Part shown: positions 2,840 to 28,061 of the stretch, one piece after another
Numbering within the stretch: position 1 is the stretch's first letter
Layout of the letters: every line of letters begins with the position of its first letter
Source of the DNA: Octopus sinensis
Taxonomy: Eukaryota
Reading direction: 5' to 3'
DNA length: 28,061 bases
Assembly (NCBI RefSeq): GCF_006345805.1
Contig: NW_021827538.1
Span: 1-28,061 of the forward strand
Position numbers and translations under genes: made by a program
The notes under the pieces: generated by a model
Database searches by the model: none
Seen by the model: only the letters and a program-made list of their open reading frames with translations
Told to the model about the DNA's origin: nothing

Positions 2840-3059
2840 AAGATAGGGATTTCTAAGGTAGCCCACGCGCATCGTCACCTCATTCTACATGTCCCTGTAA
2901 ATGTTGGAGCGAATCGGACGGGATGTAGTGGCATTGAAAGCGATCCAAGAAGATAGGGATTTCTAAGGTAGCCCACGCGCATCGTCACCTCATTCTACAT
3001 GTCCCTGTAAATTTTGGAGCGAATCGGACGGGATGTAGTGGCATTGAAAGCGATCCAAG
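2840..3059. repeat. 110-bp tandem duplication
   Basis: 2840-2949 and 2950-3059 differ by one substitution (atgttgg vs attttgg). Confidence 0.95.
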
Positions 3060-9220: not shown

Positions 9221-10910
9221 AAGCAGTTCGGTTTTGTACCAGGTAGAAGCACCACTGATGCTATATTCCTGGTCCGACAACTGCAGGAGAAGTACCTAGC
9301 TAAAGATAAACCCCTCTACATAGCTTTGTAGACTTTGGAGAAAGCCTTTGACAGGGTTCCCCGTTCCCTTATCTGGTGGTCGATGCGGAAACTGGAGATT
9401 GAAGAATGGCTAATAAGGGCTGTACAGGCTCTATACAGAGAAGCTGTCAGCAAGGTTAGGATGGCAACGAATATAGTGAAGAATTCCGGGTAGAAGTAGG
9501 TGTGCACCAGGGCTCAGCCCTCAGTCCCCTTTTATTCATCATAGTCCTTCAGGCAATAACAGAGGAATTCAAAACGGGATGCCCCTGGGAGCTCCTCTAT
9601 GCCGATGACCTAGCTCTCATAGCAGAATCACTACCGGAACTAGAAGAGAAATTCGGGTGTGGAAGCAAGGGTTGGAATCAAAGGGCCTTAGAATAAATGT
9701 AGCAAAGACCAAAGTATTAGTAAGCAGCAAGAGGTACTCAGCACACATCCCTCGGGTAGGTGGCCCTGCTCAACCTGTAGGAAAGGTACAGGTAGAAACT
9801 CCATAAGATGCACCCAATGTAAGTTATGGACACATAAGAGGTGCAGCAACATTAAAGGGAAATTAACAGATAAGATAGCTTTCATGTGCGGCAGATGCAC
9901 AGGGACAATAGACACAACAGACACTCAGAAAACAGATTCCATCACACTCCAGGGAGAGAAACTAGAAGTAGTTGATAGTTTCCGCTACCTGGGTGACCAA
10001 GTTAGTAGCGGAGGTGGATGCACAGAGAGTATCACCACTAGAATACGAATAGCTGGGCAAAGTTCAGAAAGCTCCTACCCCTACTGGCAACAAAAGGTCT
10101 CTCCCTCAGAGCAAAAGGTAGATTGTATGATGCATGTGTGCGAACTGCCATGCTTCACGGTAATGAAACATGGGCTGTGACTGCAGAAGACATGCGTAGA
10201 CTTGAAAGAAATGAAGCTAGCATGATCCGCTGGATGTGTAGTGTCAGTGTGCACGCAAAACAGAGTGTAAGTATCTCTGAGAGAAATGCTGGATATAAGA
10301 AGCATCAGATGTGGTGTGCAAGAGCGACGCTTGCGATGGTATGGTCATGTGCTGCGGATGGATGAAGAGAGATGTGTGAAGAAGTGCCACTCCCAAACAG
10401 TTGAAGGTATCAGGGGGAGAGGTAGACCCAGGTAGACATGGGATGAGGTGGTCAAGCATGACCTCAGAGCATTGGGCCTCACTGAGGCAATGGCGAAGGA
10501 CCGAGATCTCTGGAGATATGCTGTGACTACAAAGACCCGGGCTGCTTTCTGCAGCAATTCCACATACCCCCTACCCATTCTAAGTACCCCGGATCCCCAA
10601 AGTACCCTGGATTCCCAAAGTACCCCGATCCCCAAAGTACCCCGGACCTCGTTGCCCCCGTGCCGTTGACACGTTAAAATGCTCGAACCGATCGTGACGA
10701 TGCCGGACCCTCCGGCCCCTGTGCAGGTGGCACGTAAAAAGCACCCAATCCACTCACGGAGTGGTTGGCGTTAGGAAGGGCATCCAGCCGTAGAAACTCT
10801 GCCAGATTCAGACTGGAGCCTGGAGCGGCCCCTGGCTTCCCAGACCCGGTCGAACCGTCCAACCCGTGCTAGCGCGGAAAGCGGACGTTAAACGATGATG
10901 ATGATGATGA
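9221..10910 (+). mobile_element. 5'-truncated, frameshifted RTE-clade non-LTR retrotransposon (RT, PHD finger, C-terminus, 3' UTR)
   Basis: Across frameshifts it translates as QFGFVPGRSTTDAIFLVRQLQEK, EKAFDRVP, VHQGSALSPLLF, LLYADDL (YADD catalytic motif), KTKV, LEVVDSFRYLG, MLHGNETW and RRLRWYGHV. It ends with a 3' UTR and (GAT)n. Confidence 0.92.
10582..10651 (+). repeat. 18-bp minisatellite (aagtaccccggatcccca), 4 copies, in the RTE 3' UTR
   Basis: Units start at 10582, 10600, 10618 and 10635. Confidence 0.9.
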
Positions 10911-12005: not shown

Positions 12006-12439
12006 TATATATATAAATATTTAGCAGAAGTAACAAAGTGACCCAAGATCCGAAAGTTTCGTTTATTAGCATTTATCAAACTGGTTCTTTGGAGGTATAT
12101 TCCCAGACCTCCAAACACCACTTTGATGAGTGTCAACTCTTGGACCTTGAGTCCCTACTGTCACGCCCCTATCACCCCTACCTCTATCTTTCATCTCTCA
12201 ATCACTCTCTCTTCTTTTCTTTTTACTCTACTATCTTACTGCTATGATAAAGATTGGCAGTAAATCTCTTCTCTTCACCATTCTTCCAATGAAACTAGGG
12301 ATGTTACTGGACCTACCTGGGTCTCTCCCTAACACCCAAACCACTCCTTTTCATATATTTATTACCCTAGATCTCTCACCCATCCCAAGGTATATATCAA
12401 ACCCAGAGACTGAGGGGAACCTTTAGTTTTGTCAAGGAC

Positions 12440-12620
12440 ATGGTGATCGTCTCTAGTGACGGTGCCATAAGATGCACCCAGTGCACATTGTGCAGTGGTT
12501 GGTGTCAGGAAGAGCATCCAGCTGTAGAAAGAAAACCAGAAAATGTAACTTCAGGCAAGATATTCTCTGAACCATCCAACCCATTCCAGCATGGAAAGTG
12601 GGGGTAAAATGATGATCATC
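12440..12620 (+). mobile_element. Old degenerate RTE-tail copy
   Basis: gtggttggtgtcaggaagagcatccagctgtagaaa...ccaacccattccagcatggaaagtgg...atgatgat. Confidence 0.65.
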
Positions 12621-14288
12621 ATACATACATACAGACGTATGGATGTATAAATATACATATGTGCATCTTTCTTTGTCTATATATTATACACATTCATTCA
12701 TATATATGTGTATGTGTATATAAATACATCTACGATTAGATTAAAGTCTAATTATTATGAGGGGTTTTGTAGGTTTTTCTTCCCCAAAATAAACCAAGTA
12801 GAATGGCACAAATGAAACATAAACATTCATTCCAATTTAATTTTACAATAGAAATATTGGCAATTATCTGCTTTTCTCTTTATAAACTTTGTTGTCAACA
12901 ACAACAGCAATAACAACAACATATCCTTATCCAGCTTTTCTCCAAAATATGTTGTTTAGTCCATGTATATTCAAAGAGCTGACATCCTGAAGAAGGATGA
13001 TGATGATGGGTCACCAGAATATCATTAAACACCCCACCAATATTTCCTAATCCACCTCATGAAACCCCCAATACTTCATAATAAACTACACCAAGTTATA
13101 ACTCCTCACCTAACACAAAACAAAACACACTTCACCTGCCAAACCCCTTTTTCATACAAACACATCTTTCTCATTGCTACCCAAACATTGTCCCTTATAT
13201 TAAAGATAATTAAGATGAACCTACCTTTCATTAATTGGGCTTATTCATTAACCAATCTTTATGATCTCAACAGCAACAAATAATAACGATCCTCTCAACA
13301 TGCTGTCTATCAGTGTGATTATATGAAAGCCCATCTTTGGATAAGCTTTCCGAGTTAATCAATGTTGTGTATGATAATTGTGTGGATTATATTGAAATGT
13401 CGAGAGATTTACAGCATTTGTCAGGTTAAGAACAGTTTCATCTCCAGCTTTATTGGTATCTGTGAATCCAGGTAAATATGATAGAAACCAAGCCAACCAT
13501 GACTGTCACATCATTTCCAGTGCATATAATTATTAATAATACTCATATTCCTGATTTGTAGGGACGTGGTATTTCATTATGCAACCATAAATTCCTGTAA
13601 AATATATTAAATCGTTTTAGAAGTCAACACCACATTCTACTTTGTTAGCAGTGTTTTTCACATTATTCTATTGATATTCCATAGAAATTATAGTTGGCTC
13701 TGATTTTTTGCTAAAACCTTTCCTATCGAGATGTCAGATGTAAACAAACAATGAGATACACAATGAGAACAAACAACAGATGTTTTTCTCTTTGATCTCA
13801 TTGTTTGTTTCCGTCTGACATTTCGATATGAAATGTTGTAGCAGGAAATTAGTCCTGGCTATAATTTCTACCGATAATATCTGTAGAAATAACCTCAGCA
13901 AAATATTTATATTCCTTCTTACTACAAAACTTTTCACCATCACTTATATTCAGTCAATAAAGATAATGGTGTATTTATATCTTCAAGTTTTATTTCTAAT
14001 GATTATTCCATTGGAAACAGTTTAAATGTTTAACTTCACTGTCAAATAAACAATTTGTTTAATGTATTTAATGAAATGTGTGTTTTCCTTGAAATTCTTT
14101 GAATGAATCAAGTAAATATTATTTTATCAAAAGCTTTTCACAAAACTAATAAAGTTTCCATTTTATTTCAGCTTTCATGTAAAAATTAGTGAATTTTGAA
14201 GAGATAAATTGTATTCCAAAGGAAGAAAACAAAATCCACAGAAAAGAATATATTTAACAGAAAAAGATAATAATTCTATATTCATAAA

Positions 14289-16442
14289 ATGGAGATGATT
14301 AATGAAGAAAACAAAATGTTGGCTCTCATTCCTGCCACAGTCTGTGATACAACAGCAATTTATAAGGAAACTACACCAAATCTTCCCCAAATATTACACA
14401 CACAAAACACAAAGAAAACAGAAGAACAGGAAAGAAAAGACACAAAGAAATCTAAAGAACAGGAAAAGTCCATGTTACCAAGTTTCCTTCATATTGTGAC
14501 ATGTAACCGAACACTAATCAAAACAGACCACATCAATACGTTTATAGATTATGTAAAGGATAAATGTAATCACATGGACTCTCTGGGTTTAAATGGATCT
14601 CGAATTTTACGTAATATCAAACGTAAAATGCCAAGATTTCTGGAATTTGCAAAACAAAATAATGATTTTGTTCACCTAAACCTTGATTGGTTTCAACAAA
14701 GACTCTTTGACATTTATGTCACCTGTAACCCATACAACCACAAGACCATTGAACCACCAAAAGTAACCACAAAATTTCGTCCTCTTCGGCCAGTTGTGAC
14801 CAGAGAAGTAGAGATTGAGGAATCTGGTGAAGACTTAAGCAACCCAATATCCAATATTGTTGTCATACAAGGGGGTATTGTAACATATTCCCGCCACTTT
14901 ATGACAATATGTTGTATAACAAGAGACGGCAACAGAAACGATGTTCGTTGCTCATCTTCTGTCACTGATTTTACCAGAATCAGTGAAGACACAGTCCTCG
15001 CCACCCTGCCCTTCCGAAAAATGATTCTTATTATCAACCCTTTAAGTTTGAGAATCAAAAGAATTCAGCTAGGATTAATCTTGGTTTCTTATTTGGAACA
15101 TTCTACACTTATAGGTGTAGAAATGTTTGGTCGGACCATATACGTCATTGACTGGGAAGAGAATAGAATAAAATACGAATTCATAACGAAAGAAACCCCT
15201 TCAGATATTGCTGTAGGAGCACAAAATAAACTCTTAGTATCCTTTTCCAATATTAACAGGGTTACCTGTTACAATGTGGATGGTCAGCAGTTATTTGAGG
15301 TGGATACAAATTCCCTGGACATTCCAAGCCACATCTCTGTGTACCAAAACCATTTTTATGTCCTTCAGGGACATATTATTTATCGGATATCAGGTACAGG
15401 TGCTGTGACAACAAGAGAAATTGGCATGAAATGCCGCCATATTTCTGTTGGCAAAGAAAACATTTTTGTAACTGATTATTTTGATGTCCTTCATATCATT
15501 GGAACAAATGAAGACTTTTGGCCCAGGCAGTCACATAACCCCCAGCTATGGACCCCAACATTGAACAACTATATTTATATTGAGGATTGCTACAACATTA
15601 CAAATATTCTACCTATGTCTACATCTTCTATATTAATAATTTACAAAAACAAGAAAGCTAAATTATTCACTGATAACAGGGAAATAATTAACCAAAATAA
15701 TTCAGTTTTCCTTGAGCTTCCTTCTTTCTGTTGTAGAATAAACGCAAACAGATTCCTGGTATTTTATCATGAAATGAAAGGATTTCAGTATATCACCTGT
15801 CCTGAACTAAGAAAAGGCCCTTTAATAAAGGTGCAAACTGGTTACATGAAAATATGTCATATTGTATCAAATAAGTATTTAGCTGTGACCACCGATGAAA
15901 ACAAAAGCGAGGTCCAAATCCTCTTGATCAACGAAGATAAAGTTGACATTGCAGAAAGAATTTCTCTGGGACATCATAATGTCAGCATTGCTGCAACTCC
16001 AATTAATTTTGTAGTCGTAGATGGAAACGAAAATAAAATGGTATTTTATTCCACATGTGGTGAAGAACTTTTTCAAAAATACCTTCCATTCTATGGCTAC
16101 CCTCATCACATCTACTCTGATAATGTTTATTTCTATGTCCTCTTCAGGAGACACTCTATTCTCAGATGTTACGATCTATATGGACAAATGAAATGGCAGT
16201 GGGAACTGCCTTTCCCTGTTCACCCTCACATTGCTGTTTTCCAAGGAACTCTTTATGTCCCGGACACTCAACTCAACAGGGTTCTTCTTTACAAGTATCA
16301 AGTCCGGTCGTCTGGCTGTCTTTTACCCATTAAAAATCCTTATATCAGAAATCTAAATCTACGACTCAAAGAAAAGGAGAATGACCAAAAACTTGTCATT
16401 GGCGAAATATGTAATTTGTCCAATGGACAGTTGGTGGTCTGA
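14289..16442 (+). CDS. N-terminal part (717 aa) of a large intronless multi-beta-propeller (NHL-like) protein: short helical region plus ~2 propellers
   Basis: A 2.15-kb stop-free frame in AT-rich DNA. The ATG has A at -3 and G at +4, with a candidate acceptor ttttatttcAG at 14170-14171. Blade-like motifs recur (TPSDIAVGAQNKLLVS, CYNVDGQ, HPHIAVFQGTLYVPDTQLNRV). It ends at the frameshift mid-blade (QLVV*). Confidence 0.8.
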   Translation: MEMINEENKMLALIPATVCDTTAIYKETTPNLPQILHTQNTKKTEEQERKDTKKSKEQEKSMLPSFLHIVTCNRTLIKTDHINTFIDYVKDKCNHMDSLGLNGSRILRNIKRKMPRFLEFAKQNNDFVHLNLDWFQQRLFDIYVTCNPYNHKTIEPPKVTTKFRPLRPVVTREVEIEESGEDLSNPISNIVVIQGGIVTYSRHFMTICCITRDGNRNDVRCSSSVTDFTRISEDTVLATLPFRKMILIINPLSLRIKRIQLGLILVSYLEHSTLIGVEMFGRTIYVIDWEENRIKYEFITKETPSDIAVGAQNKLLVSFSNINRVTCYNVDGQQLFEVDTNSLDIPSHISVYQNHFYVLQGHIIYRISGTGAVTTREIGMKCRHISVGKENIFVTDYFDVLHIIGTNEDFWPRQSHNPQLWTPTLNNYIYIEDCYNITNILPMSTSSILIIYKNKKAKLFTDNREIINQNNSVFLELPSFCCRINANRFLVFYHEMKGFQYITCPELRKGPLIKVQTGYMKICHIVSNKYLAVTTDENKSEVQILLINEDKVDIAERISLGHHNVSIAATPINFVVVDGNENKMVFYSTCGEELFQKYLPFYGYPHHIYSDNVYFYVLFRRHSILRCYDLYGQMKWQWELPFPVHPHIAVFQGTLYVPDTQLNRVLLYKYQVRSSGCLLPIKNPYIRNLNLRLKEKENDQKLVIGEICNLSNGQLVV

Positions 16443-19400
16443 CATCAACCATGATTGCTTGTTGTACATTTCTGAGGAAGGAGACATTGTGTCCAGATTA
16501 TCTCTGCCGTCTACAGCCACAGATATATGTCGATGGGATTCTAATCATATAGGGGTCACATTACCCCTACAGAAACAATTAAGGGTCATCGGAAACCTAT
16601 CAAAGACAGTGAGAAGTGTATCATTAAGGCAGCCTTATGTACGGGTGTGTAAGATGGGTGAATGTGAAATTGTTTGTTATTGTGATAAACCATCACATTT
16701 AGACATTTTAGCCATCAATTATTATAATCAAGTCGAAGTAATTAAGACAATTAATATCCCTGTGTTTGTGAAATCATTATCAATAGACAAGAAAACAGAA
16801 AAGCTATTAATTGTTACTAGGGGAAAAGCTTTTCAGTACAACACTAGAATAGGTGGTGGTGGTCATGGCAGTGCACGTCGTCAGAGTGGTGGAAGTGATG
16901 GTAGTATTAGTAGTGGTGATGGTAGTATTAGTAGTAGAGATGGTAGTATTAGTAGTAATGATGGTAGTATTAGTAGTAGAGATGGTAGTATTAAGTCTAA
17001 AATAAAAGCTTTCTTCACGCTCTTTTGTTGTGGTGGTCATCGTCGTCCTCTTCCTGGTGATGGTCATCATCGTCCTCTTCGTGGTGGTGGTCATCATCAT
17101 CGTCGTCTTCATGGTGGTAAAACTAGATATCGTTATGTTAGTAAAACTAAGATGGTCCCCAGTGTTTTAATGTCCCAAGTGAAACGTCCCCTCAGTCTCC
17201 AAGGTGGATCTATTGACCAAACGTCTGTTTATCTGATAGACAGAAGCCGTATGTTTGCCATAAACGATCAGAATTTGTTGGTTAATGATCTCGTTACTAA
17301 TAATCAACTTAATTATTATATCGACCTGGTGGATGTATTTTCCAGACACATTTCTCTCAGTGAAATGTTGTCTTCCACTTTATATCTACAGGACCTCACA
17401 GTTTCTGATAAAGCCAGACATATTCCTCTCCCTAAACATTTGGGAGACAAAGAACCAGCGTGGATTAAACGTTTGGTTCTTTCTGAAAATAATCTGATTG
17501 CAGGATTTGACAGGAATAATGGAAACATTAAGATATTCACATTGGATGGTCACCTTATGGATTCAATCAAAGTGAATGTTTATAATTATATTAAAATGTG
17601 TCGATGGCAGTCAAACACACTGGTCATTATGACTGGGGATCTTTCTAATAATAAATACCAACTGTTGACATTAAAAGTGGAATTTCCATTGTCGTTGGTA
17701 AATTACAAAACGAGAAATAATTATAAATGTGTGGCTTCTTTATCAAATAATCAACTGGTTTTGAGTGAATGGAGATATGGAAGACATTTGCATTTTGTTG
17801 ATATTGATGAAATACATTCGAGTGTGAAGGAAACAAACAAAATAGACATACCTGAACCATTATTAACGGGAGACAAATATGGAAATAATTATTCTTATGA
17901 CATCCAGGATATTAAAGTTACTGATGAAGATGTCATCATTGTCTTCAACTTGAGATTCATCATTTTCTTCAACAGTGGTGGTCAATATTTACATTCAGTC
18001 AGACACTACATGAAGTATTATTCTGGTGGTGATGACAGGATGACAATTGATGACAGTTTTTTGTACATTTATGGTCATTGGGAGAAATATTTAGGTTCAT
18101 CTGGATATCGAAACATTTTGTGTTTGACCCAGAATGGGGAATACAAGAGAATATTTTTAAATAAAAGAATTTATAAAGATGAAGTACAATTCTCCAGTAT
18201 AGACTGTAAAGGACCAAGGTTTGTTGGAAGCTCCAGGAAGGGAATGAGATGGAAGGAATTGTATGTTGAAGGGTTGTTTATGGTGAATCGAGACAGCTTC
18301 CCGGTTGCTCGTTTACAAACAGACGAATGTCCTGTTCAAGTAAAAGATTTTGATGTCTCTGAGGAAGGAAAGACAGTTGTGTGTGAAAAAGCCAATAATG
18401 GAAATGTTAAAATATTCGATGAAGACGGCCAGTTGCTATGTCACAGAAATGTTGCAAGTTTAGTTGGTGGTGTGTGTTTTACACAAGAATCACACATAAT
18501 GGCCACGGTTCCTAAAAGGAAAGAAATATTTCAACTGAATGGAGAAGATTTGCAGACATCTCAAGTTTGGTCGAGTCTCATCCCTTATGGTGTAATATGG
18601 AGAAAAGTGGTGGGTATTTACTGGTGTGTACATAATGAATTGATTGAATGTCATTGCATAAAGATTGATGGGGACCAAGTGAACATTCTGGAATCTGTGT
18701 CGTCATTAAATCTTGATTCTGGTCTTCGTTTCCCTTCCATTACATCTGAAACGAACAAGGAAATATTCAGTAATGAATTAATTAGTAAATTGGAATACAG
18801 AGGAGGAGATGGAGATGGAGGAGGAAGAAGAAGAGGTAAATCAGGTGAAATAATTGGTAAAGGTAGATTAAAGGTGATATGTGGTAATTACATAGCGGAG
18901 ATTAATAATTCAGGAATTGATGAAATATCAGTGAGGAGATTTCCATATAGGACAGCAATGGTCCCTTTTTCCATTCCTGCATTCGAGGAACCTCTTGATT
19001 ATAATCGGAGGGACATTAGGGACCAGAACAGTAAACTAATTAAGTTAGATGAGAATGTGAGTGTGTTGATGTTTCAAGAAAGTGTCACATTAATCAGAAC
19101 AACAACAACAGTGGACATACTTCAACATGAACAACAACAACGACCACCACTGGACATATGTCGGTGGACAGAGGAATGTTTCATTGTCGCCTTTGGGAGA
19201 GAAATGAGGGTCTTCAACAGGGATCTCCGTCGTTTAAAAACCATCAGAACTGAGAAATACTACAACAGGATTTATAAATACAACGACAATCAACTCGTGT
19301 GTGGTGGTCATTATATTAGAGACATAACTCAAGAAGAGAGACACAAGAAATACAAAAGAATATGGGAGAACAACAAGGATTACTATTATTGCAAAGACCC

Positions 19401-19962
19401 CGACATCTTTGACCCTTATTATGTGGATGTGGTTGATATCAAAGATGGGAAATGTAAAGATGAAGTGTGTCGTGGGAAGACGGGGAGATATGGAAGGTTG
19501 GAGGGAGATGGAGGGGTGTTGGATGGTGTGGGAGTCACATCTTTTGGTGATGTTGTTGTTGTGAGGAGGGAGATGAAGAAGGAGTCTGTAATTTGGGAAC
19601 TTTTTTGTTTTGTGGAATGGTTCAGGGAAAAGTCTTTGGTGAGGAGGATAAGAATAGAAGGAGGAATGCTTTATGCTCCGGAATATTATATTCCAAAACC
19701 TCGTCTGACCATAATTGGTGAATGTGTTTATATAACAGATTTAAGAAACAATATTTACGAAATACCTCGACATATTGAAGAGGAAACATCTGAAGATGAT
19801 GAAATCCTGGAATTAGAAGATAATCCAAAATATTTACTCCTCAGAGAGGATGATAATGAAGTCTATGAAGTTCTTGGTTTGGATGTTTCAGACAATTCTT
19901 TGATGGTTTTTGGAATTATTCCTGGACGTCAATCTTTTGCTTTCTTTTATTTTGACAAATAA
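16381..19962 (+). CDS. C-terminal part (1193-aa ORF, homologous frame from 16438) of the same multi-propeller protein, ~4 propellers
   Basis: A 3.58-kb stop-free frame with repeated DICRW/KMCRW blades, IKIFTLDG and VKIFDEDG motifs. It is homologous to the paralog at 26716-28061. The first 19 codons are an off-frame reading of the upstream ORF's tail. Confidence 0.85.
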   Translation: MTKNLSLAKYVICPMDSWWSDINHDCLLYISEEGDIVSRLSLPSTATDICRWDSNHIGVTLPLQKQLRVIGNLSKTVRSVSLRQPYVRVCKMGECEIVCYCDKPSHLDILAINYYNQVEVIKTINIPVFVKSLSIDKKTEKLLIVTRGKAFQYNTRIGGGGHGSARRQSGGSDGSISSGDGSISSRDGSISSNDGSISSRDGSIKSKIKAFFTLFCCGGHRRPLPGDGHHRPLRGGGHHHRRLHGGKTRYRYVSKTKMVPSVLMSQVKRPLSLQGGSIDQTSVYLIDRSRMFAINDQNLLVNDLVTNNQLNYYIDLVDVFSRHISLSEMLSSTLYLQDLTVSDKARHIPLPKHLGDKEPAWIKRLVLSENNLIAGFDRNNGNIKIFTLDGHLMDSIKVNVYNYIKMCRWQSNTLVIMTGDLSNNKYQLLTLKVEFPLSLVNYKTRNNYKCVASLSNNQLVLSEWRYGRHLHFVDIDEIHSSVKETNKIDIPEPLLTGDKYGNNYSYDIQDIKVTDEDVIIVFNLRFIIFFNSGGQYLHSVRHYMKYYSGGDDRMTIDDSFLYIYGHWEKYLGSSGYRNILCLTQNGEYKRIFLNKRIYKDEVQFSSIDCKGPRFVGSSRKGMRWKELYVEGLFMVNRDSFPVARLQTDECPVQVKDFDVSEEGKTVVCEKANNGNVKIFDEDGQLLCHRNVASLVGGVCFTQESHIMATVPKRKEIFQLNGEDLQTSQVWSSLIPYGVIWRKVVGIYWCVHNELIECHCIKIDGDQVNILESVSSLNLDSGLRFPSITSETNKEIFSNELISKLEYRGGDGDGGGRRRGKSGEIIGKGRLKVICGNYIAEINNSGIDEISVRRFPYRTAMVPFSIPAFEEPLDYNRRDIRDQNSKLIKLDENVSVLMFQESVTLIRTTTTVDILQHEQQQRPPLDICRWTEECFIVAFGREMRVFNRDLRRLKTIRTEKYYNRIYKYNDNQLVCGGHYIRDITQEERHKKYKRIWENNKDYYYCKDPDIFDPYYVDVVDIKDGKCKDEVCRGKTGRYGRLEGDGGVLDGVGVTSFGDVVVVRREMKKESVIWELFCFVEWFREKSLVRRIRIEGGMLYAPEYYIPKPRLTIIGECVYITDLRNNIYEIPRHIEEETSEDDEILELEDNPKYLLLREDDNEVYEVLGLDVSDNSLMVFGIIPGRQSFAFFYFDK
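16897..16992 (+). repeat. In-frame 21-bp coding minisatellite (DGSISSx), ~4.5 copies
   Basis: gatggtagtattagtagt(ggt/aga/aat/aga) at 16897, 16918, 16939 and 16960, partial at 16981. Confidence 0.95.
17032..17118 (+). repeat. Imperfect in-frame coding repeat, GG-H(H)-R(R)-PL, three units
   Basis: GGHRRPLP / GDGHHRPLR / GGGHHHRRLHGG, built from ggt, cat and cgt triplets. Confidence 0.85.
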
Positions 19963-19963
19963 A
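19958..19963 (+). promoter_or_regulatory. Candidate polyadenylation signal AATAAA overlapping the stop codon
   Basis: aaa-TAA-a contains AATAAA at 19958-19963. The hexamer is common in AT-rich DNA. Confidence 0.35.
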
Positions 19964-20027
19964 TATTTCCAGAAATATTAAACTTCAATCTTCTTCTTCT
20001 TCTTCTTATTGTTGTTGTTGTTTTAAA

Positions 20028-20080
20028 TGGCTTCGCCCGGGAATCGAACCTGCATCGCATACATTGCATTCTACACACTA
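20028..20080 (-). other. tRNA-like 3' fragment (B box plus acceptor-like end), not a complete tRNA
   Basis: The minus strand reads ...gcaGGTTCGATTCCcgggcgaagcca. No matching 5' acceptor strand or proper anticodon arm is present. Confidence 0.4.
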
Positions 20081-20224
20081 ACACTTATTATTGTAACATT
20101 CCTCAACACTCTCTCTTTGTGTGTGTGTATATATTTATATACAGTATGTGCTCATGCGTTTATATATATATACACAGATATTTAGGAATGTATGTATAGA
20201 AATAAGGCTATTAGTATGTATGTT

Positions 20225-20282
<58 letters not shown>

Positions 20283-20354
20283 TGCATGTATGTATAGGAA
20301 TGTCTGGTCCGAAAGCAGAGACTTTCATATTCATTGATTCTCCATTAAAAGGCA

Positions 20355-20568
20355 GACGACCACCGCCGACGTCTCCGCCGCCGTCGTCGTGGCCGTGGTG
20401 GTCGTCGTCGTCGTCGTCGTGGTGGTGGTGGTGGTCGTCGTCGTCGTCTCCGCCGTCGTCGTCGTCATCATCATCATCATCATCATCACCATCATCATCG
20501 TCATCATCATCATCATCATCGTCATCATCATCATCATCATCATCATCGTCATCATCGTCGTCGTCATC
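20355..20568. repeat. Compound trinucleotide microsatellite (GTC/GTG/ATC)
   Basis: Direct reading. Confidence 0.95.
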
Positions 20569-20754
20569 AGCTTTGTGTGTGCGTGTGTGCAGTCTGCATC
20601 TGACAGTTTTTAACGTTTAATAAGAACAGATTGTTGTTGTTGTTGTTGTTGCAGTGACATTCCAACTGCACACACGCACAAACATTGCCTTTCGTCCTCG
20701 TAGGGTTGTTGTTGTTGTTGTTGTTGCTGTTGGGGGTTCATAAAAAAAGAGAAA

Positions 20755-21385
20755 GACACTTTAAGAAGCATTCAGTAAAAGCTTTCCCATAGCTGGTCAT
20801 TTTTCATGCTAGAAATAGAAACCACTTTATTTTTCATATAAAATTTGAAGGACACTTTAAGAAGCATTCATAAATAAAATTGACCTGTATATGGTCTCAT
20901 TTCATGCTAGAAAGAGCCACCTAAACCTTCACATTTTTGTTTCATCACAAATAAAAATGGAAGGACAATTTACAAAGCATCCATGTTAAATGTTGTCCTA
21001 TAGATGGCCTAACATGATGCTAGAAATAACAGCCAAATACTCTGAAATTTGTATCGTTTTTCATAAAAAAAGTGAAGGACACTTTAAGAAGCAACTCTAA
21101 AAATATTGTCCCGTGGCAGTTTAAGTGTAAAATATTATAAAAGTATGCATTTATGAGTTTTATGTGTTTAAAAAACATAGCAAAGACATGTGTGTATATG
21201 TAGGTATATACATGTGTATAAAGGTATTTTTGTGTACAAATGGGTATTTTTGAATGAAATTTGGTAGAGATAACTTTCAAACGATGTAGATTACGATTAA
21301 AAAGAAATTTGTTGGCAAAATGTTTTGTAAGGGTTCGAGGGAAAAAGTGTGTGATTTAAGGGAGATTTGGCTGTTGTTTCTAGCA
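20755..21385. repeat. Four diverged 96-114-bp tandem units plus a 21-bp inverted repeat pair
   Basis: gacactttaagaagca-type anchors at 20755, 20851, 20964 and 21078. tgctagaaataacagccaaat (21018-21038) is inverted at 21365-21385 with one mismatch. Confidence 0.75.
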
Positions 21386-21734
21386 CACCACCCTCCTTGT
21401 CTTCTTTTTTTTTCTCATTTTTTCCCTCAGAAACACATTTATGTTATAAAAAAATAAAAAGAATATTTTTAAAATCTCTGATTATTTTTAGCCCCACTTC
21501 CTGGCCCCCGATTCTTTCTCTTTATATAATTGTAAAATATTGGAGAGCCTGAGAAGATTCTTGCTGGGATTTATCCACAGGGATTTAAATAAGAGCTTTG
21601 TAAAAGAGGATTTCTTTTGAGAGCATCCTTTTCTCTTAGAAAATGAAAGTGGAAGTTTCATTAAAAATATCCATTCTCCTGGAAGTTCTGAGGAAACAAA
21701 GTCCATGGGGTGTTCATCTGTAGTTAAGCCACAG

Positions 21735-21777
<43 letters not shown>

Positions 21778-22238
21778 GTAGAAATGTAGGTGTGTATATA
21801 TATATTATATGTATGTGTGTTTGTGTATACATTTATTCATGTATATGTACAAGTTTAAAAAAGAAATATCAAAAGATGTTGGAATATTTGAGGTATTGGA
21901 TAATTTCAGACTCTATTGTATAGGATTGCCGATACATTTATATAGGAATATAAATATACATCATAATTATACCCACAGGAAAGCAGAATATTATACATAC
22001 ATACATATTCATATATAAACTCAGATATATATACACCTACAGATATATATATACATATAATTATACATTATTATACGTAACCTTCATGCACACACATAGA
22101 AAAGACGACGGGTAAATCCATCTGTGACAACCCATGCTTAAGGGTGTCTGGTGATATTTCTGGTCTGGTATCACACAAACCGCCCAGTCTGGAGTCTCTC
22201 TATAACTTCTGCCGCTTCCCGTTCAATTGTTTCTATCT

Positions 22239-22317
22239 GTTGCCTAGCAACGCTAATTTGAATGACAAAAAACGTGGAGAAAAAGGCGGGAAATTTAGAC
22301 AAAACTTTGTCTAAATT
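22239..22317. promoter_or_regulatory. Candidate promoter motif cluster: RFX X-box, CHR-like hexamer, E2F site, palindrome
   Basis: GTTGCCTAGCAAC at 22239-22251, TTTGAA at 22257-22262, GCGGGAAA at 22286-22293, and a 12-bp-arm inverted repeat at 22292-22317, in a locally CpG-richer patch. Confidence 0.45.
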
Positions 22318-22734
22318 ATTTATTTAAAATCAAAGAGACATTGTCAGCATTTTTATGAATTAAATAATGTAAAATGACATTAAAGTTCTCACAATTAAGT
22401 CATTAATTAGGAATTATAATTAATTTGGACGTGAAAAAGAAAGGAAAATTTCGATATGTATTTATGTATGTACATAAGCAGGTAAATATTTATATATGTA
22501 AGTATGTATGAATATTTACATACGTCTATAGAGAGAGAAAGGGGGAGAGAGAGGGTGGAGTATTACACATGTATACACATAAGACGAATGATGTCTGGGT
22601 GTGTATCAGTGTGTCTGTGTGTGTATATACACGCCTGTTTATGTTTGGGCGTGTGTGTGTATTTATGTGTGATGTTGTGTGTGTGTGTGTGTATCCGGGA
22701 ACGTCACTTTCTGCCTCTCTCTCTATTTCTGACT

Positions 22735-22892: not shown

Positions 22893-22931
<39 letters not shown>

Positions 22932-23319
22932 TTTTTCTCTTTTACTTGTTTCAGTCATTTGGCTGCGGCCAAGCTGGAGCACCGCCTTTAATCGAGCAAC
23001 TCAATCCCGGGACTTTTTCTTTTGTAAGCCTAGTACTTATTCTATCGGTCTGTTTTGCCGAACCGCTAAGTAACGGGGACGTAAACATCGGTTGTCAAGC
23101 AATGCTAGGGGGACAAACACAGACACACACACACTCATATATATATATAAATATATACGACGGGCTTCTTTCAGTTTCCATCAAACAAATCCACTCACAG
23201 GGCTTTGGTCGGCCCGAGGCAATAGTAGAAGACACTTGCCCAAGATGCCACGCAGTGGGACTGAACCCGGAACCATTTGGTTGGTAAACAAGCTACTTAC
23301 CACACAGCCACTCCTGCGC

Positions 23320-23320
<1 letters not shown>
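22932..23320 (-). mobile_element. Near full-length tRNA-derived SINE
   Basis: The minus strand starts ggcgcaggagtggctgtgtggtaag, with B box ccgggttcagtccc, complete body and A-rich 3' end. Confidence 0.9.

Positions 23321-23321
<1 letters not shown>

Positions 23322-23367
<46 letters not shown>
23322..23367. repeat. (CA)n microsatellite
   Basis: Direct reading. Confidence 0.95.
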
Positions 23368-23370
<3 letters not shown>

Positions 23371-23826
23371 GGGACCAATCTTAGATTACCCCAATCTGTT
23401 AATAACTGTAATTGCATAAGCAGAAATAAATGTGTGTTTGGTAATCAATGCCTCAGGAAGGAGGTAGTTTACCAATGCACTGTGGATACACAATTTAGTA
23501 GTAGGGTGTATATCGGAGCAACTATGAATAGCATGAAACAGAGACTTAATTATCACAGATATACTTTTAGAAATATAAATAGGATGTACTCTACAGGGTT
23601 AAGTGCATACATCTGGGAACTCAAAAGTAAGAACTTAGATTTTAGATTAAATTGGAAAATACTAACTTCGGCACCTGTGTATAATGGAAAAAATAAAAAA
23701 TGCTCTCTATGTATTAATGAAATTTTTTTCATTATTAAAGCGGGTAGGCATATTATTAACAACATAAATGAAAAAAACTTTTTTTGCATTCATAAACTAC
23801 CGTTCACTTTTTCTAGATTGAAATAG
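23368..23826 (+). mobile_element. GIY-YIG endonuclease domain of a 5'-truncated Penelope-like element
   Basis: 152 open codons: CNC-x5-C-x4-C, VVY...VYIGAT, KQR-x3-H, LSAYIWELK, WKIL, CSLC-x2-E, IINN, CIH. This is a typical PLE endonuclease layout with no RT upstream. Confidence 0.85.
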
Positions 23827-26570: not shown

Positions 26571-26715
26571 TATATATATATATATATATATATATATGTC
26601 TGTATTTAACTCTCTCACTTTGTCTTTATCTACAACAACCTCCACTCTGTACCAGTGTCTGAGGTTTGGTTGTTTATAGAAGTGGTATGTTTAACAAGGA
26701 GTGTTTCAGCCTGTG

Positions 26716-28061
26716 TTGGCAAAATATGTAATCTGTCCAATGGACAGTTGGTGGTGTCTGACATCAAGCATGATTGCTTGTTATACATTTCTCAGGAAGG
26801 AGACATTGTGTCCAGATTATCTCTGCCGTCTACAGCCACAGATATATGTTAGTGGGGTTCTAATCATATAGGGGTCACAGATGGTTGCCAGTGTTTTACA
26901 GTCCCAAATGAAACCTCCCCACAATTTCTATGGTGGATGTATAGATAAAAATGTTTGTTAGACAACATCCCTATGTTTGTTATAAATGATTACTATTTGG
27001 TGGTTAAGGATCTCGTTACAAATAATCAGCTTAATATTGACATGGCACATCTATTTTATAGAAACATCTGTGTCAGTGAAATGTTGTCTTCTAAATTCTA
27101 TCTACAGGATCTCCAGGTTTCCGAGACAAACAACCAGTGCAGATTTTTCGTTTGGTTATTACTGAAAACAACCTGATTGCAATATACGACAGGAAAAATA
27201 AAAAACATAAGAAATTCACATTTGATGGTCATCTCTTGGATTCTATCAAATTGAATGTCTCTGCCATCAATATGTGTCGATGGCAGTCAAACCCACTGGT
27301 TATTACAACTGGTGATGGTGACAACCAAATGTTGACATTAAAAGTTGAATTTCAATTGTCATTGGTGATTTAGCAGACAAGAAATAAATATCATTGTATT
27401 GCTTCTTTGTCGGATGGTCTACTAGTATATAATTGGGATGGAGATGAACGTACTTTGTATGTCATTGATTTTGATGAAATCCATTCGACTGTGAGTATAA
27501 TGAAGCAAATAGACATACTGAGACATTATTGATGAGAGGTGGTGAGGTTATTGATTATGTTGAAGGCATATGCAATATTACAGTGACTGTTAATGATGTC
27601 ATCCTCGTTAGCAACAACAAATTCATCAATTTCCTCAGTAGTGATGGTCAGTATTTACATTCAGTTAGACACTACATGAAGTATATCAGTATTCATAGCA
27701 ACATAACAGTTGATGAGAAAAGATATCATCTCTATGGTATATTTAACAACATAGTGTGTTTCACACAGACTGGTGACCACAGCAAAATATATTTAAATGA
27801 AAGAATTTGTGTATGTAAAGTGGGCTTTAGCTGTATAAACAGTAAAGGGCCGAGATTTATTGGAAGTCACAGAAATAAATTGTATGTTGAAGGTTTGTTT
27901 CAGCTTAATCGGGAGAGATTCCCTGTTTGTCGTTTACAAACAGACGACTGTCCTGTTCAAGTAAAAGATTTTGATGTCTCTGAGGAAGGAAAGACAGTCG
28001 TGTGTGAAAAAGCCAATAATGGAAATGTTAAAATATTTGATAGAGACGGGGAGTTGCTATG
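26716..28061 (+). pseudogene. Decayed tandem paralog of the multi-propeller gene (propellers 3-5 region), truncated by the window end
   Basis: Colinear with ~16398-18440. Lesions: TAG at 26850-26852, a 590-bp deletion (gene 16561-17150), a 37-bp deletion near 27124, a stop at 27371-27373, and a 1-bp deletion near 27520. Confidence 0.85.

What the first reader, a model, noticed from the sequence alone, without database searches (positions are those of the whole stretch)
14289..19962. Giant single-exon protein built from about six tandem NHL-like beta-propellers
Seen: joining the two ORFs gives ~1891 aa with no intron. The same blade pair recurs: TDFTRISEDTVLAT, SFCCRINANRFLVF, TDICRWDSNHIGVT, KMCRWQSNTLVIM, GGVCFTQESHIMAT and LDICRWTEECFIVA, usually followed by a Y-x2-[VI] blade (GYMKIC, PYVRVC, NYKCVA, PYGVIW, YYNRIY). 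Approximate modules: 14840-15520, 15580-16300, 16390-17400, 17460-18280, 18335-18950, 19030-19959. Known: single propellers of this style cap the expanded molluscan B-box/TRIM-NHL-like proteins. Inference: here the binding domain is multiplied about six-fold with no RING, B-box, signal peptide or clear TM segment. I do not recognise this architecture; it may be a cytosolic multivalent sensor or scaffold from a lineage-specific family.
Basis: partly seen in the sequence, partly recalled or inferred. Interest (0 to 1): 0.85.

Follow-up and report, generated by a model that had tools for sequence, protein, structure and literature searches.

The report
Octopus hypervariable six-propeller gene family
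This is one slightly broken copy of an octopus-only family of more than 150 intron-less genes, each encoding a giant protein of about six beta-propeller rings; two of the rings carry hypervariable surface loops under diversifying selection, the hallmark of a recognition (immune-like) receptor repertoire, and I found no paper describing it.

Summary
Two ORFs (14274..16442 and 16357..19962, + strand) are one gene split by a 2-bp deletion that intact paralogues lack. Joined, they give about 1,890 aa. The window is an unplaced scaffold whose genome has the size and scaffold count of the Octopus sinensis assembly.

AlphaFold models show a disordered N-terminus, a small helical domain and six beta-rich modules. 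Four modules are confidently six-bladed propellers. There is no RING, B-box, signal peptide or TM segment, and no Pfam family reaches threshold. "NHL-like" is only a remote relation, seen for module 1.

The gene belongs to a family of at least 150 copies, at least 35 with open frames of 1,600 aa or more, concentrated on one 15-Mb chromosome. Named relatives occur only in octopods (Octopus species, Argonauta).

Among recent paralogues, propellers 4 and 6 have pN/pS of 1.9 and 3.4 (P = 5e-5 and 4e-8). Discrete hypervariable codons sit in alternate loops, meaning one face, inside an invariant framework. The other modules are under purifying selection.

Best reading: a germline-diversified intracellular recognition-protein repertoire. 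Expression and ligands are untested.

The parts
14289..19962 (+). Whole gene: a single-exon CDS of about 1,890 codons, interrupted once by a 2-bp deletion. It is one member of the octopod six-propeller family.
14289..14516 (+). N-terminal region (aa 1-76), predicted disordered and rich in Lys/Glu. Not a signal peptide.
   Evidence: pLDDT below 35. Mean hydropathy of the first 25 residues is 0.36, and no 19-residue window reaches 1.6.
14517..14723 (+). Small helical domain (aa 77-145, four helices). Paralogues carry one of two sequence types here. Possibly an oligomerisation or effector module.
   Evidence: pLDDT 51-62. G41/L42/F76 are invariant in alignment A3. No Pfam or PDB match.
14853..15503 (+). 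Propeller 1 (aa 189-405): six blades, under purifying selection. The only module with detectable remote similarity to an NHL-repeat protein.
   Evidence: pLDDT about 66-88. pN/pS 0.2-0.3. hhalign 93.8% against the Owenia NHL protein.
15558..16295 (+). Propeller 2 (aa 424-669): 24 strands, six blades, under purifying selection.
   Evidence: pLDDT about 71-91. pN/pS about 0.5. Weak similarity to bacterial NHL/SGL/DUF5128 propellers.
16432..16442 (+). Frameshift site. GGTGGTCTGAC replaces the GGTGGTGTCTGAC or GGTGGTGTCCGAC of intact paralogues, a 2-bp deletion that creates TGA at 16440-16442.
16456..16842 (+). Module 3, first part (ORF2 aa 7-135): beta strands at low confidence, under purifying selection.
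   Evidence: pLDDT 44-72. hhalign M3-M6 97%. pN/pS 0.42.
16843..17154 (+). Disordered low-complexity insert inside module 3. It holds coding minisatellites of 21 and 27 nt (16894-17118) and varies in length between paralogues.
   Evidence: P0005 lacks the insert. pN/pS about 1.
17155..17412 (+). Module 3, second part, plus a helical linker (ORF2 aa 240-325). Conserved.
   Evidence: pN/pS 0.32.
17413..18270 (+). Propeller 4 (ORF2 aa 326-611): hypervariable. Discrete variable codons lie in alternate loops within an invariant framework.
   Evidence: pLDDT mostly about 65-89, lower after aa 574. pN/pS 1.89, P = 5e-5. Alignments. 20 of 25 hypervariable positions lie in even-numbered loops.
18271..18939 (+). 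Module 5 (ORF2 aa 612-834): the most conserved stretch among recent paralogues. It contains an NHL-style blade motif (VKDFDVSEEGKTVVCEKANNGNVKIFDEDG), but the fold is poorly predicted.
   Evidence: pLDDT below 50. pN 0.011 and pS 0.016. hhalign M4-M5 65%.
18940..19959 (+). Propeller 6 (ORF2 aa 835-1174), with a helical insert. Its C-terminal two-thirds (aa 959-1174, nt 19312-19959) are hypervariable. The GIIPGRQSFAFFYFDK end is shared by the close paralogues.
   Evidence: pLDDT mostly 70-93. pN/pS 3.39, P = 4e-8. Alignment. 21 of 22 hypervariable positions lie in odd-numbered loops.
26715..28059 (+). Decayed second family member. It is 5'-truncated (starts at about residue 704), lacks residues 759-964, lies in three different frames and runs off the contig end.

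Best explanation
SHOWN. The locus is one member of an octopod-restricted multigene family of intron-less genes of about 5.6 kb. This copy carries a 2-bp frameshifting deletion, so it is either a young pseudogene or an assembly error.

Each gene encodes a protein of about 1,700-1,900 aa with no signal peptide or TM segment, so it is presumably cytosolic or nuclear. The protein has a disordered N-terminus, a small helical domain and six beta-rich modules. At least four modules are six-bladed beta-propellers, distantly related to the NHL/SGL class.

The family has at least 150 copies in the genome. Older, divergent copies are scattered on several chromosomes. A recent star-like burst sits on the 15-Mb C30 and on unplaced scaffolds such as this window.

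Reading frames are kept open by selection. Propellers 1, 2, 3 and 6a are under purifying selection. Propellers 4 and 6b accumulate amino-acid changes faster than silent changes, at discrete positions in alternate loops, which means one face of each ring.

INFERRED mechanism. The conserved propellers and the helical domain form a constant scaffold, for oligomerisation or signalling. The hypervariable faces of propellers 4 and 6 are ligand-binding surfaces. Gene duplication plus diversifying selection then produce a germline repertoire of intracellular recognition proteins. These would act as innate-immune or restriction-factor-like sensors of fast-evolving targets such as viruses, other intracellular parasites or mobile elements.
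For: Architecture:
- AlphaFold2 models give a helical domain and 24-strand propellers.
- Foldseek matches only multi-propeller proteins, at E 1e-17 to 1e-11.
- Modules are similar to each other in register.

No other domains. No TM segment or signal peptide.

Family size and integrity:
- 150 scored matches out of 224 candidates. 35 have open frames of 1,600 aa or more and 38 have 1,000-1,599 aa.
- Full-length ORFs are confirmed.
- The CDS is intron-less in O. bimaculoides and Argonauta.

Restriction to octopods.

Selection for coding capacity: neutral simulations expect about 9-10 stops between close copies and 32-39 between deeper pairs. None is observed.

Diversifying selection:
- Whole-gene dN/dS is 0.8-1.0 between the closest copies and 0.4-0.6 at greater depth.
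- In five phylogenetically independent pairs, M4 has pN/pS 1.89 (P = 5e-5) and M6b 3.39 (P = 4e-8). M3, M3b and M6a lie at 0.3-0.5. M1 is 0.2-0.3 and M2 about 0.5.
- Hypervariable codons are flanked by invariant nucleotides, third positions included. There is no base-specific bias.
- Their positions alternate between loops.
- The same positions vary among O. vulgaris paralogues from an independent assembly: 44 of 46, against 17 of 764 invariant positions.
Against: - There is no expression, localisation or binding evidence of any kind.
- No recognisable signalling or effector domain (death-fold, TIR, NACHT, RING) is present.
- Modules 3 and 5 are not confidently folded. I could not inspect coordinates, so 'one face' rests on loop parity in a DSSP string. 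For M4 the enrichment is not significant once loop length is allowed for (P = 0.28).
- pN/pS was computed by counting on pairs, not with recombination-aware codon models. Paralogue gene conversion may distort pS: silent divergence varies between regions in the same pairs, from 0.015 to 0.1.
- The intact copies were chosen for being intact, so the stop-codon test suffers from ascertainment.
- About half of the scored copies are fragments or are broken. That also fits a high-turnover 'ampliconic' family with a different biology.
- Absence from squids and cuttlefish was judged from protein databases, not from their genomes.
Confidence: 0.55

Rival explanations
1. An ampliconic 'conflict' family. 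The genes were amplified on one small chromosome because they take part in intragenomic conflict or reproductive competition, such as meiotic drive and its suppression, or gamete or sperm-egg recognition. Rapid evolution would reflect an arms race within the species, not with pathogens.
For: - Copies are concentrated on C30 and on the homologous 29-Mb O. vulgaris chromosome.
- The recent burst is star-like.
- Many copies are broken or fragmentary, and a decayed copy lies in this very window.
- Duplication units exceed 10 kb.
- dN/dS exceeds 1 in binding modules, which is also typical of reproductive and drive genes.
Against: - Nothing links C30 to sex determination or drive.
- Older family members are single, conserved and scattered on other chromosomes. 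Some have near-identical O. vulgaris counterparts, which suggests an ordinary cellular role that predates the burst.
- No tissue data exist.
Confidence: 0.15
2. A constant structural or scaffolding protein, for example a cytoskeleton- or vesicle-associated multi-propeller like EML, IFT or COPI subunits. Its variable loops would merely be unconstrained, and its copy number a by-product of segmental duplication.
For: - Foldseek's best matches are scaffolding multi-propeller proteins.
- Most of the protein is under purifying selection.
Against: - Relaxed constraint gives pN/pS of at most 1. It does not give 1.9-3.4 with P below 1e-4.
- The variable sites are discrete, recur in two species and are enriched in Trp, Tyr, Arg, Asp and Glu.
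- Foldseek identity is only 8-11%, with low TM scores. This is fold-level similarity only.
Confidence: 0.1
3. A non-functional repeat. The ORF would be carried by, or would itself be, a mobile or satellite-like element, and the copies would be decaying pseudogenes.
For: - Copy number is high, and many copies are truncated or frameshifted, including both copies in the window.
- Transposon fragments and microsatellites surround the gene.
Against: - The ORF has no transposase, integrase, RT or helicase domain.
- Similarity to close paralogues continues more than 2 kb beyond both ends of the ORF and shows no sharp element boundary.
- 35 copies keep open frames of 1,600 aa or more although about 9-40 stops are expected under neutrality.
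- Framework modules show dN/dS of 0.2-0.5.
- Intact intron-less orthologues exist in O. bimaculoides and Argonauta.
Confidence: 0.05
4. An ordinary TRIM-NHL gene whose RING, B-box and coiled-coil exons lie upstream and were missed.
For: - Module 1 is remotely similar to an annelid NHL-repeat protein.
- A helical segment precedes the propellers.
- A PHD-finger ORF lies 4 kb upstream.
Against: - An in-frame stop lies 15 nt upstream of the ATG, and this ORF lead-in recurs in four paralogues.
- Gene models in O. bimaculoides and Argonauta are single exons equal to the ORF, and three O. sinensis RefSeq proteins match the direct ORF translation at 100%.
- The named family proteins carry no RING or B-box among their precomputed Pfam domains, and a direct scan of 23 members found none.
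- The PHD ORF belongs to a dispersed repeat that sits at varying positions near other copies.
- TRIM-NHL proteins have one propeller, not six.
Confidence: 0.03

Closest known systems
NHL-repeat six-bladed propellers (Pfam PF01436; TRIM-NHL proteins such as Brat, LIN-41/TRIM71 and TRIM2/3/32; lophotrochozoan NHL-like expansions) and the related bacterial SGL/DUF5128 propellers
   Same: - The ring has six blades of about 36-42 residues each.
- Blade motifs have the NHL style, for example ...G.IVV.D..N..I.IF..DG.
- The only extra-octopod hits of the family profile are NHL, SGL or DUF5128 proteins.
- Module 1 aligns to an Owenia NHL protein at 93.8% hhalign probability. That protein also shares the 'DxCRI' blade.
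   Different: - No member reaches the NHL HMM threshold.
- There are six propellers in tandem instead of one.
- There is no RING, B-box or filamin domain.
- The family is restricted to octopods and is hugely amplified.
- It has hypervariable loop positions.
Fungal HNWD/NWD proteins (HET-E, HET-D, HET-R of Podospora): STAND/NLR-like proteins whose WD40 propeller repeats carry hypervariable positions. Recalled from my own knowledge, not tested here.
   Same: - A beta-propeller serves as a diversified recognition surface.
- Discrete hypervariable positions on one face are under positive selection within an otherwise near-identical framework.
- It is a multigene family with signs of sequence exchange.
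   Different: - There is no NACHT/NB-ARC domain or HET effector domain here.
- Variation here lies between whole paralogous genes, not between repeat units inside one gene.
- The propellers are six-bladed and NHL-like, not WD40.
- The lineage is animal.
TRIM5alpha/TRIM22-type restriction factors, whose B30.2/SPRY variable loops are under positive selection. Recalled from my own knowledge.
   Same: - A cytosolic protein with a helical region followed by a target-binding domain.
- Surface loops evolve with dN/dS above 1.
- Lineage-specific gene expansions occur.
   Different: - The binding fold differs (SPRY versus propeller).
- TRIM5 has RING and B-box effector domains.
- TRIM copy numbers are far lower.
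Multi-propeller scaffolds: DDB1 (three propellers), IFT-A subunits, UTP/WDR proteins, EML-type proteins, LRP/megalin YWTD arrays
   Same: Several propellers in one chain. These are the best Foldseek matches.
   Different: - Sequence identity is 8-11% and TM scores are low.
- Those proteins are conserved and single-copy, mostly with seven-bladed WD40 rings or extracellular YWTD rings.
- None has six NHL-like rings or hypervariable faces.
Other germline-diversified invertebrate recognition families (snail FREPs, bivalve C1qDC and TLR expansions, sea-urchin Trf/185-333) and lamprey VLRs
   Same: Lineage-specific expansion by duplication with diversifying selection on binding surfaces. Bivalve C1qDC and TLR papers turned up.
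   Different: - Those are secreted or membrane proteins built on other folds (fibrinogen, C1q, LRR).
- This family has no signal peptide or TM segment and is built from propellers.

Membership tests
NHL repeat / TRIM-NHL | Blades match the Pfam NHL repeat model (PF01436) above its 20-bit cut-off | tested here: not met
   No NHL hit for the window ORFs at E up to 1 or for 23 family members at E up to 0.1. A six-frame scan of the whole genome with PF01436 finds 17 matches at about 9 loci, none on C30 or in this family.
NHL repeat / TRIM-NHL | Six-bladed beta-propeller of about 40-residue, four-stranded blades | tested here: met
   Modules 1, 2 and 6 are modelled with 24 strands and module 4 with 23, at pLDDT of about 70-90. 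Modules 3 and 5 are not confidently modelled.
NHL repeat / TRIM-NHL | Detectable homology to bona fide NHL proteins | tested here: inconclusive
   The profile search gives E 4.9e-4 to an Owenia protein that carries Pfam NHL repeats, and E 1.4e-5 and 3.5e-4 to bacterial NHL/SGL/DUF5128 proteins. hhalign gives 93.8% for M1, 25% for M6 and no more than 6% for M2-M5 against the Owenia protein. The PDB NHL domain (Thin) scores only E 2.4.
NHL repeat / TRIM-NHL | N-terminal RING, B-box and coiled-coil (tripartite motif) | tested here: not met
   The first 184 aa have no Pfam hit. No RING or B-box was found in 23 members scanned directly, or among the precomputed domains of the 64 proteins. A stop lies 15 nt upstream of the ATG. 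Gene models in two other species are single-exon. A short helical domain exists, but whether it is a coiled coil is unproven.
WD40 multi-propeller proteins (IFT-A, UTP, EML, DDB1-like) | WD40-type repeat signatures or family HMMs; usually seven blades | tested here: not met
   Only isolated sub-threshold hits in single members (ANAPC4_WD40 0.004, WDR90 0.012, CFAP43 0.063). The models have six blades. Foldseek similarity is at fold level only, with 8-11% identity.
Transposable element protein | Transposase, integrase, RT or helicase domain; defined termini | tested here: not met
   No such domain was found. Homology to close paralogues extends more than 2 kb past both ORF ends without a sharp boundary.
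Germline-diversified recognition-receptor multigene family (functional class) | Many paralogues with dN/dS above 1 confined to surface positions of a binding domain, on a conserved framework | tested here: met
   At least 150 copies. pN/pS is 1.89 for M4 and 3.39 for M6b, against 0.2-0.5 in framework modules. Hypervariable positions lie in alternate loops. The pattern is replicated in O. vulgaris.
Germline-diversified recognition-receptor multigene family (functional class) | Expression in immune or barrier cells and binding of non-self ligands | not testable with these tools
   No transcriptome or binding data were available. The literature searches found nothing on this family.
STAND/NLR-type sensors with propeller sensor domains (fungal HNWD, APAF1-like) | Central NACHT/NB-ARC NTPase domain | tested here: not met
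   No NTPase domain was found in any member.

The most novel reading that the evidence does not exclude
Octopods have evolved their own large, germline-encoded repertoire of intracellular immune or restriction receptors. These would be built on an otherwise unknown hexa-propeller chassis, with specificity held in hypervariable faces of propellers 4 and 6. The repertoire would be housed mainly on one small, fast-turning-over chromosome. It would be a cephalopod counterpart of plant or fungal NLR repertoires and of primate TRIM5, using a beta-propeller as the variable module.
Probability: 0.4. Interest if true: 0.9.

Novelty: new variant of a known kind. Interest (0 to 1): 0.8.

Why it matters
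Cephalopods lack adaptive immunity, and to my knowledge few expanded pattern-recognition families have been reported in them, so how they achieve recognition breadth is an open question. This family offers a concrete candidate. It has at least 150 copies and is found only in octopods. It combines a conserved scaffold with two propeller faces showing textbook signatures of diversifying selection.

It would also be a rare animal example of a beta-propeller used as a hypervariable recognition module, and of a six-propeller chain. It suggests that one small octopus chromosome is a hotspot for this gene amplification.

The hypothesis can be tested directly with existing RNA-seq and population data and with binding assays. 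If the family instead turns out to be a conflict or reproductive family, it would be the first ampliconic gene system I know of in a mollusc.

Tried and rejected
- Self-BLASTP of the joined protein found no internal repeats. Shuffled Smith-Waterman and profile-profile comparison were needed.
- Pfam gave nothing above threshold for the window ORFs, 23 members or the N-terminal 184 aa. A profile search against PDB sequences also gave nothing.
- Foldseek on whole models returns only generic multi-propeller proteins. It cannot tell NHL from WD40.
I did not attempt it by other means. Five edge-disjoint sequence pairs were used instead.
Site analyses therefore rest on 11 distinct partial copies and 4 full-length close copies.
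- The look-up of encoding contigs does not serve O. sinensis records.
- Seven literature searches found no description of the family.
- The transposon idea was rejected: no transposon domains, and flanks are shared beyond the ORF.
- An intron at the ORF junction was rejected in favour of a 2-bp deletion.
- DGR-like base-specific mutagenesis was rejected because no base bias appears at hypervariable codons.
- The AATAAA scan was uninformative in this AT-rich DNA.
- The regional distance-matrix comparison for recombination was inconclusive, with rho of 0.33-0.58.

Full report
WHAT IS IN THE WINDOW

The window is a complete 28,061-bp unplaced scaffold (C4009) of a 2.72-Gb genome with 13,516 scaffolds. 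These figures match the Octopus sinensis assembly of Li et al. 2020 as tabulated in PMC10700109.

On the + strand there are two long ORFs, 14274..16442 and 16357..19962, in frames one base apart. The first ATG is at 14289, in a good Kozak context, and an in-frame TAA lies 15 nt upstream.

I aligned 16380-16500 to seven paralogues from the same genome. The window reads GGTGGTCTGAC where all the others read GGTGGTGTCTGAC or GGTGGTGTCCGAC. The two ORFs are therefore one gene broken by a 2-bp deletion in a short GT/GGT repeat, not by an intron. Joined, the gene encodes about 1,890 aa.

Whether the deletion is real cannot be decided here. It could mark a young pseudogene or be an error of this long-read assembly. 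The copy shows no other lesion, and its dN/dS against intact copies (0.81-0.98) is close to that between intact copies (0.77-0.82).

ARCHITECTURE

AlphaFold2 was run with an alignment of 22 homologues.
- For ORF1 (717 aa, mean pLDDT 67) it gives a disordered N-terminus (1-76), a four-helix domain (77-145), a linker and two all-beta domains (189-405 and 424-669) with pLDDT mostly between about 70 and 90. The second domain has 24 strands, meaning six four-stranded blades; the first is read as six blades once merged strands are split.
- For ORF2 (1,174 aa, mean pLDDT 57) it gives a weakly modelled module 3, interrupted by a disordered low-complexity insert of about 100-190 residues. It also gives a well-modelled 23-strand module 4 (aa 326-611), a poorly modelled module 5 (612-834, pLDDT below 50) and a well-modelled 24-strand module 6 with a helical insert (835-1174).

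Foldseek against the PDB returns only multi-propeller proteins. ORF1 matches IFT-A, UTP21, axonemal WD proteins and COPI. ORF2 matches DDB1, IFT-A, UTPs and megalin. E-values run from 1e-17 to 1e-11, but identity is only 8-11% and TM scores are low. This confirms tandem propellers and nothing more specific.

The modules are homologous to each other. Shuffled Smith-Waterman gives z up to 10. In-register hhalign probabilities are 97% (M3-M6), 93% (M4-M6), 83% (M3-M4), 80% (M2-M4) and 65% (M4-M5).

No 19-residue window reaches a transmembrane hydropathy. The maximum is 1.4, inside beta strands, and the N-terminus is not signal-like. Pfam finds nothing above threshold in the window ORFs, in 23 family members or in the N-terminal 184 aa. 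In particular there is no RING, B-box or NHL.

IS IT NHL-LIKE?

The Pfam NHL model does not hit the family. In a six-frame scan of the whole genome it finds only 17 repeats at about 9 loci, none of them in this family. A family profile covering the helical domain and propellers 1-2 finds nothing among PDB sequences. The best E is 0.6, and an NHL domain scores E 2.4.

That same profile was searched exhaustively against 1.84 billion representative proteins. Only 25 proteins scored E of 0.001 or better. The three non-octopod hits were an annelid (Owenia) protein with genuine Pfam NHL repeats and two proteins from unnamed ENA metagenome contigs that carry NHL, SGL or DUF5128 'six-bladed propeller' domains.

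hhalign aligns module 1 to the Owenia protein with 93.8% probability over 130 columns. The other modules are too diverged to show this.

So 'NHL-like' is a fair description of the fold class and of a remote relationship. Membership of the NHL family is not established.

THE GENE IS ONE OF A VERY LARGE, OCTOPOD-ONLY FAMILY

A word-indexed search of 5.8 billion proteins returned 64 relatives. All are 'uncharacterized' or 'hypothetical' proteins of O. vulgaris, O. bimaculoides or O. sinensis, plus one from Argonauta hians at 39% identity.

In the window's own genome, a 220-aa probe found 150 scored matches out of 224 candidates.
- 35 lie in open frames of 1,600 aa or more.
- 38 lie in frames of 1,000-1,599 aa.
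- The rest are fragments or carry stops.
- Fourteen loci that I fetched contain single uninterrupted ORFs of 1,284-1,939 aa; eleven are 1,600 aa or longer.

Most close copies (85-96% identity over the 220-aa probe) lie on C30 (15.1 Mb) in both orientations, spaced 10-100 kb apart, or on small unplaced scaffolds. The best O. vulgaris relatives all sit on one 29.2-Mb chromosome. More divergent members (40-70% identity) are scattered on C1, C2, C10, C25, C27 and C28. Several have near-identical O. vulgaris counterparts, which suggests older, stable lineages.

The CDS is intron-less in other species too. The O. bimaculoides gene for P0027 spans exactly 5,352 nt for 1,783 aa. The Argonauta gene spans exactly 5,742 nt for 1,913 aa. 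Three O. sinensis RefSeq proteins equal the direct ORF translation.

Close paralogues share more than 2 kb of flanking sequence on each side (12078-22546 in window coordinates). The duplicated unit therefore exceeds 10 kb and is not a compact mobile element. The window also holds a second, decayed copy at 26715-28059. It is 5'-truncated, internally deleted and split across three frames.

THE KEY FINDING: A CONSERVED SCAFFOLD WITH TWO HYPERVARIABLE PROPELLERS

Whole-gene dN/dS is 0.8-1.0 between the closest copies (dS about 0.055) and falls to 0.4-0.6 for older pairs. The genes are nevertheless not drifting. Random substitutions at the observed divergence would introduce about 9-10 stop codons between close copies and 32-39 between older ones, and none is seen. 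None of 2,000 simulations was stop-free. The caveat is that I picked intact copies.

The high average hides strong regional contrast. I used 11 distinct close copies covering modules 3-6, whose tree is star-like. From them I took five edge-disjoint pairs.

| Region | pN/pS | Note |
|---|---|---|
| Module 4 | 1.89 | 292 non-synonymous vs 38 synonymous differences; P = 5e-5 for excess |
| Module 6b | 3.39 | 213 vs 16 differences; P = 4e-8 |
| Module 3 | 0.42 | |
| Module 3b | 0.32 | |
| Module 6a | 0.50 | |
| Module 5 | 0.74 | very low diversity |

Four full-length copies give 0.2-0.3 for module 1 and about 0.5 for module 2, and they reproduce 1.8-2.7 for M4 and M6b.

The alignments show what this means. 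The framework is invariant down to third codon positions. It is punctuated by single codons or short patches that take four to seven different residues among 11 copies, often through two or three nucleotide changes. One example is AGFDRNNGN, where F becomes W, C or Y and RN becomes ER, GG, WT, EE, RK, WK or ME. Trp, Tyr, Arg, Asp, Glu and Gly are frequent, and there is no base-specific bias.

I mapped these positions onto the model's strand order.
- 20 of 25 hypervariable positions of module 4 fall in even-numbered loops.
- 21 of 22 of module 6 fall in odd-numbered loops.
- In a propeller, alternate loops all lie on the same face.
- For module 6 the bias survives correction for loop length (P = 0.001). 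For module 4 it does not (P = 0.28), because the variable loops are also the long ones.

The pattern is not an assembly artefact. 44 of the 46 hypervariable positions are also variable among O. vulgaris paralogues from an independent assembly, against 17 of 764 invariant positions.

INTERPRETATION

Shown:
- An octopod-restricted, highly amplified family of intron-less genes.
- They encode proteins with no secretion or membrane signal, made of a helical domain and six propeller modules.
- Coding capacity is maintained.
- Diversifying selection is focused on one face of propellers 4 and 6.

Inferred: these faces bind ligands, and the family is a germline repertoire of intracellular recognition proteins. 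The constant propellers and the helical domain would serve assembly or signalling. The closest functional analogies are fungal HNWD proteins with hypervariable WD40 propellers and TRIM5-type restriction factors. Both come from my own knowledge and were not tested here.

The main rival is an ampliconic conflict or reproductive family. The chromosome concentration, the recent burst and the high rate of copy decay all fit it. Only expression data can separate the two. The non-functional repeat, the plain scaffold and the 'missed TRIM exons' readings are each contradicted by specific results; see the rival explanations.

NOVELTY

The proteins exist in databases only as 'uncharacterized'. Seven full-text searches found no description of the family, its architecture, its amplification or its hypervariability.

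The fold class and the principle of diversified repeat-scaffold receptors are both known. What appears new is the hexa-propeller chassis, the use of NHL-like propeller faces as the variable module in an animal, and the scale and location of the expansion.

LIMITS
- There is no expression or binding evidence.
- Selection was measured by counting, not with recombination-aware codon models.
- Absence from decapodiform cephalopods rests on protein databases only.

Noticed in passing
window 16894-17118: Coding minisatellites lie inside the gene: 21-nt units x4.8 encoding SDGSISS-type repeats, and 27/30-nt units encoding GGHHRRPL-type repeats. They form a disordered insert in module 3 whose length differs between paralogues; P0005 lacks it altogether.
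   Followed up: partly
window 9692-10180 (+): A 162-aa ORF has a PHD finger (Pfam E 6.7e-6). It lies in a dispersed repeat that recurs at 72-81% identity at various positions near other family loci (for example L023, L025, L026 and L030). It is probably part of a transposable element, not an upstream exon.
   Followed up: partly
window 23074-23826 (+): A 250-aa ORF (…VVYQCTVDTQFSSRVYIGATMNSMKQRLNYHRYTF…) has no Pfam hit. The motif looks like the GIY-YIG nuclease of Penelope-like elements. Adjacent DNA (22930-23320) is a repeat found near many other loci.
   Followed up: no
window 20182-20620: A long trinucleotide repeat ((CGT/TCA)n, 20382-20569) creates spurious Asp/His/Ser-run ORFs in several frames, just downstream of the gene. 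(TA)n, (TCTA)n, (ATAG)n and (AC)n microsatellites are scattered through the scaffold.
   Followed up: no
window 1929-2194 and 2840-3059: Tandem repeats with 100-bp units (2.6 copies) and 110-bp units (2.0 copies, 99% identical). The 1273-2304 region also matches multi-copy repeats next to paralogue L031.
   Followed up: no
G000:C9762:39393-40052 and G000:C11383:39408-40067 (L003, L004): Two unplaced scaffolds carry 100% identical copies at nearly the same coordinates. They are probably redundant haplotig or duplicate scaffolds, so copy counts in this assembly are slightly inflated.
   Followed up: partly
ORF2 aa 612-834 (window 18271-18939) across paralogues L001-L019: Silent divergence differs several-fold between regions in the same gene pairs: pS is about 0.1 in modules 1-2, about 0.045 in modules 3-4 and about 0.015 in module 5. 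Nearest neighbours also change from region to region. This suggests gene conversion or mosaic exchange between paralogues.
   Followed up: partly
Paralogue N-termini (L027, L028, L030, L031 versus L029, L032-L034 and the window): The family has two unrelated-looking N-terminal sequence types (MEKINEENK… and MEDQTENT…) upstream of a helical domain that still aligns. Among close copies this helical domain shows 14-15 non-synonymous against 0-0.5 synonymous differences. The numbers are small, but the domain may be a third fast-evolving part.
   Followed up: partly
P0007, P0059, P0073 (O. vulgaris models): A few annotated relatives are fused to C2H2 zinc fingers or to ankyrin/MIB2-like sequence. 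These may be annotation run-ons or real chimaeras.
   Followed up: no
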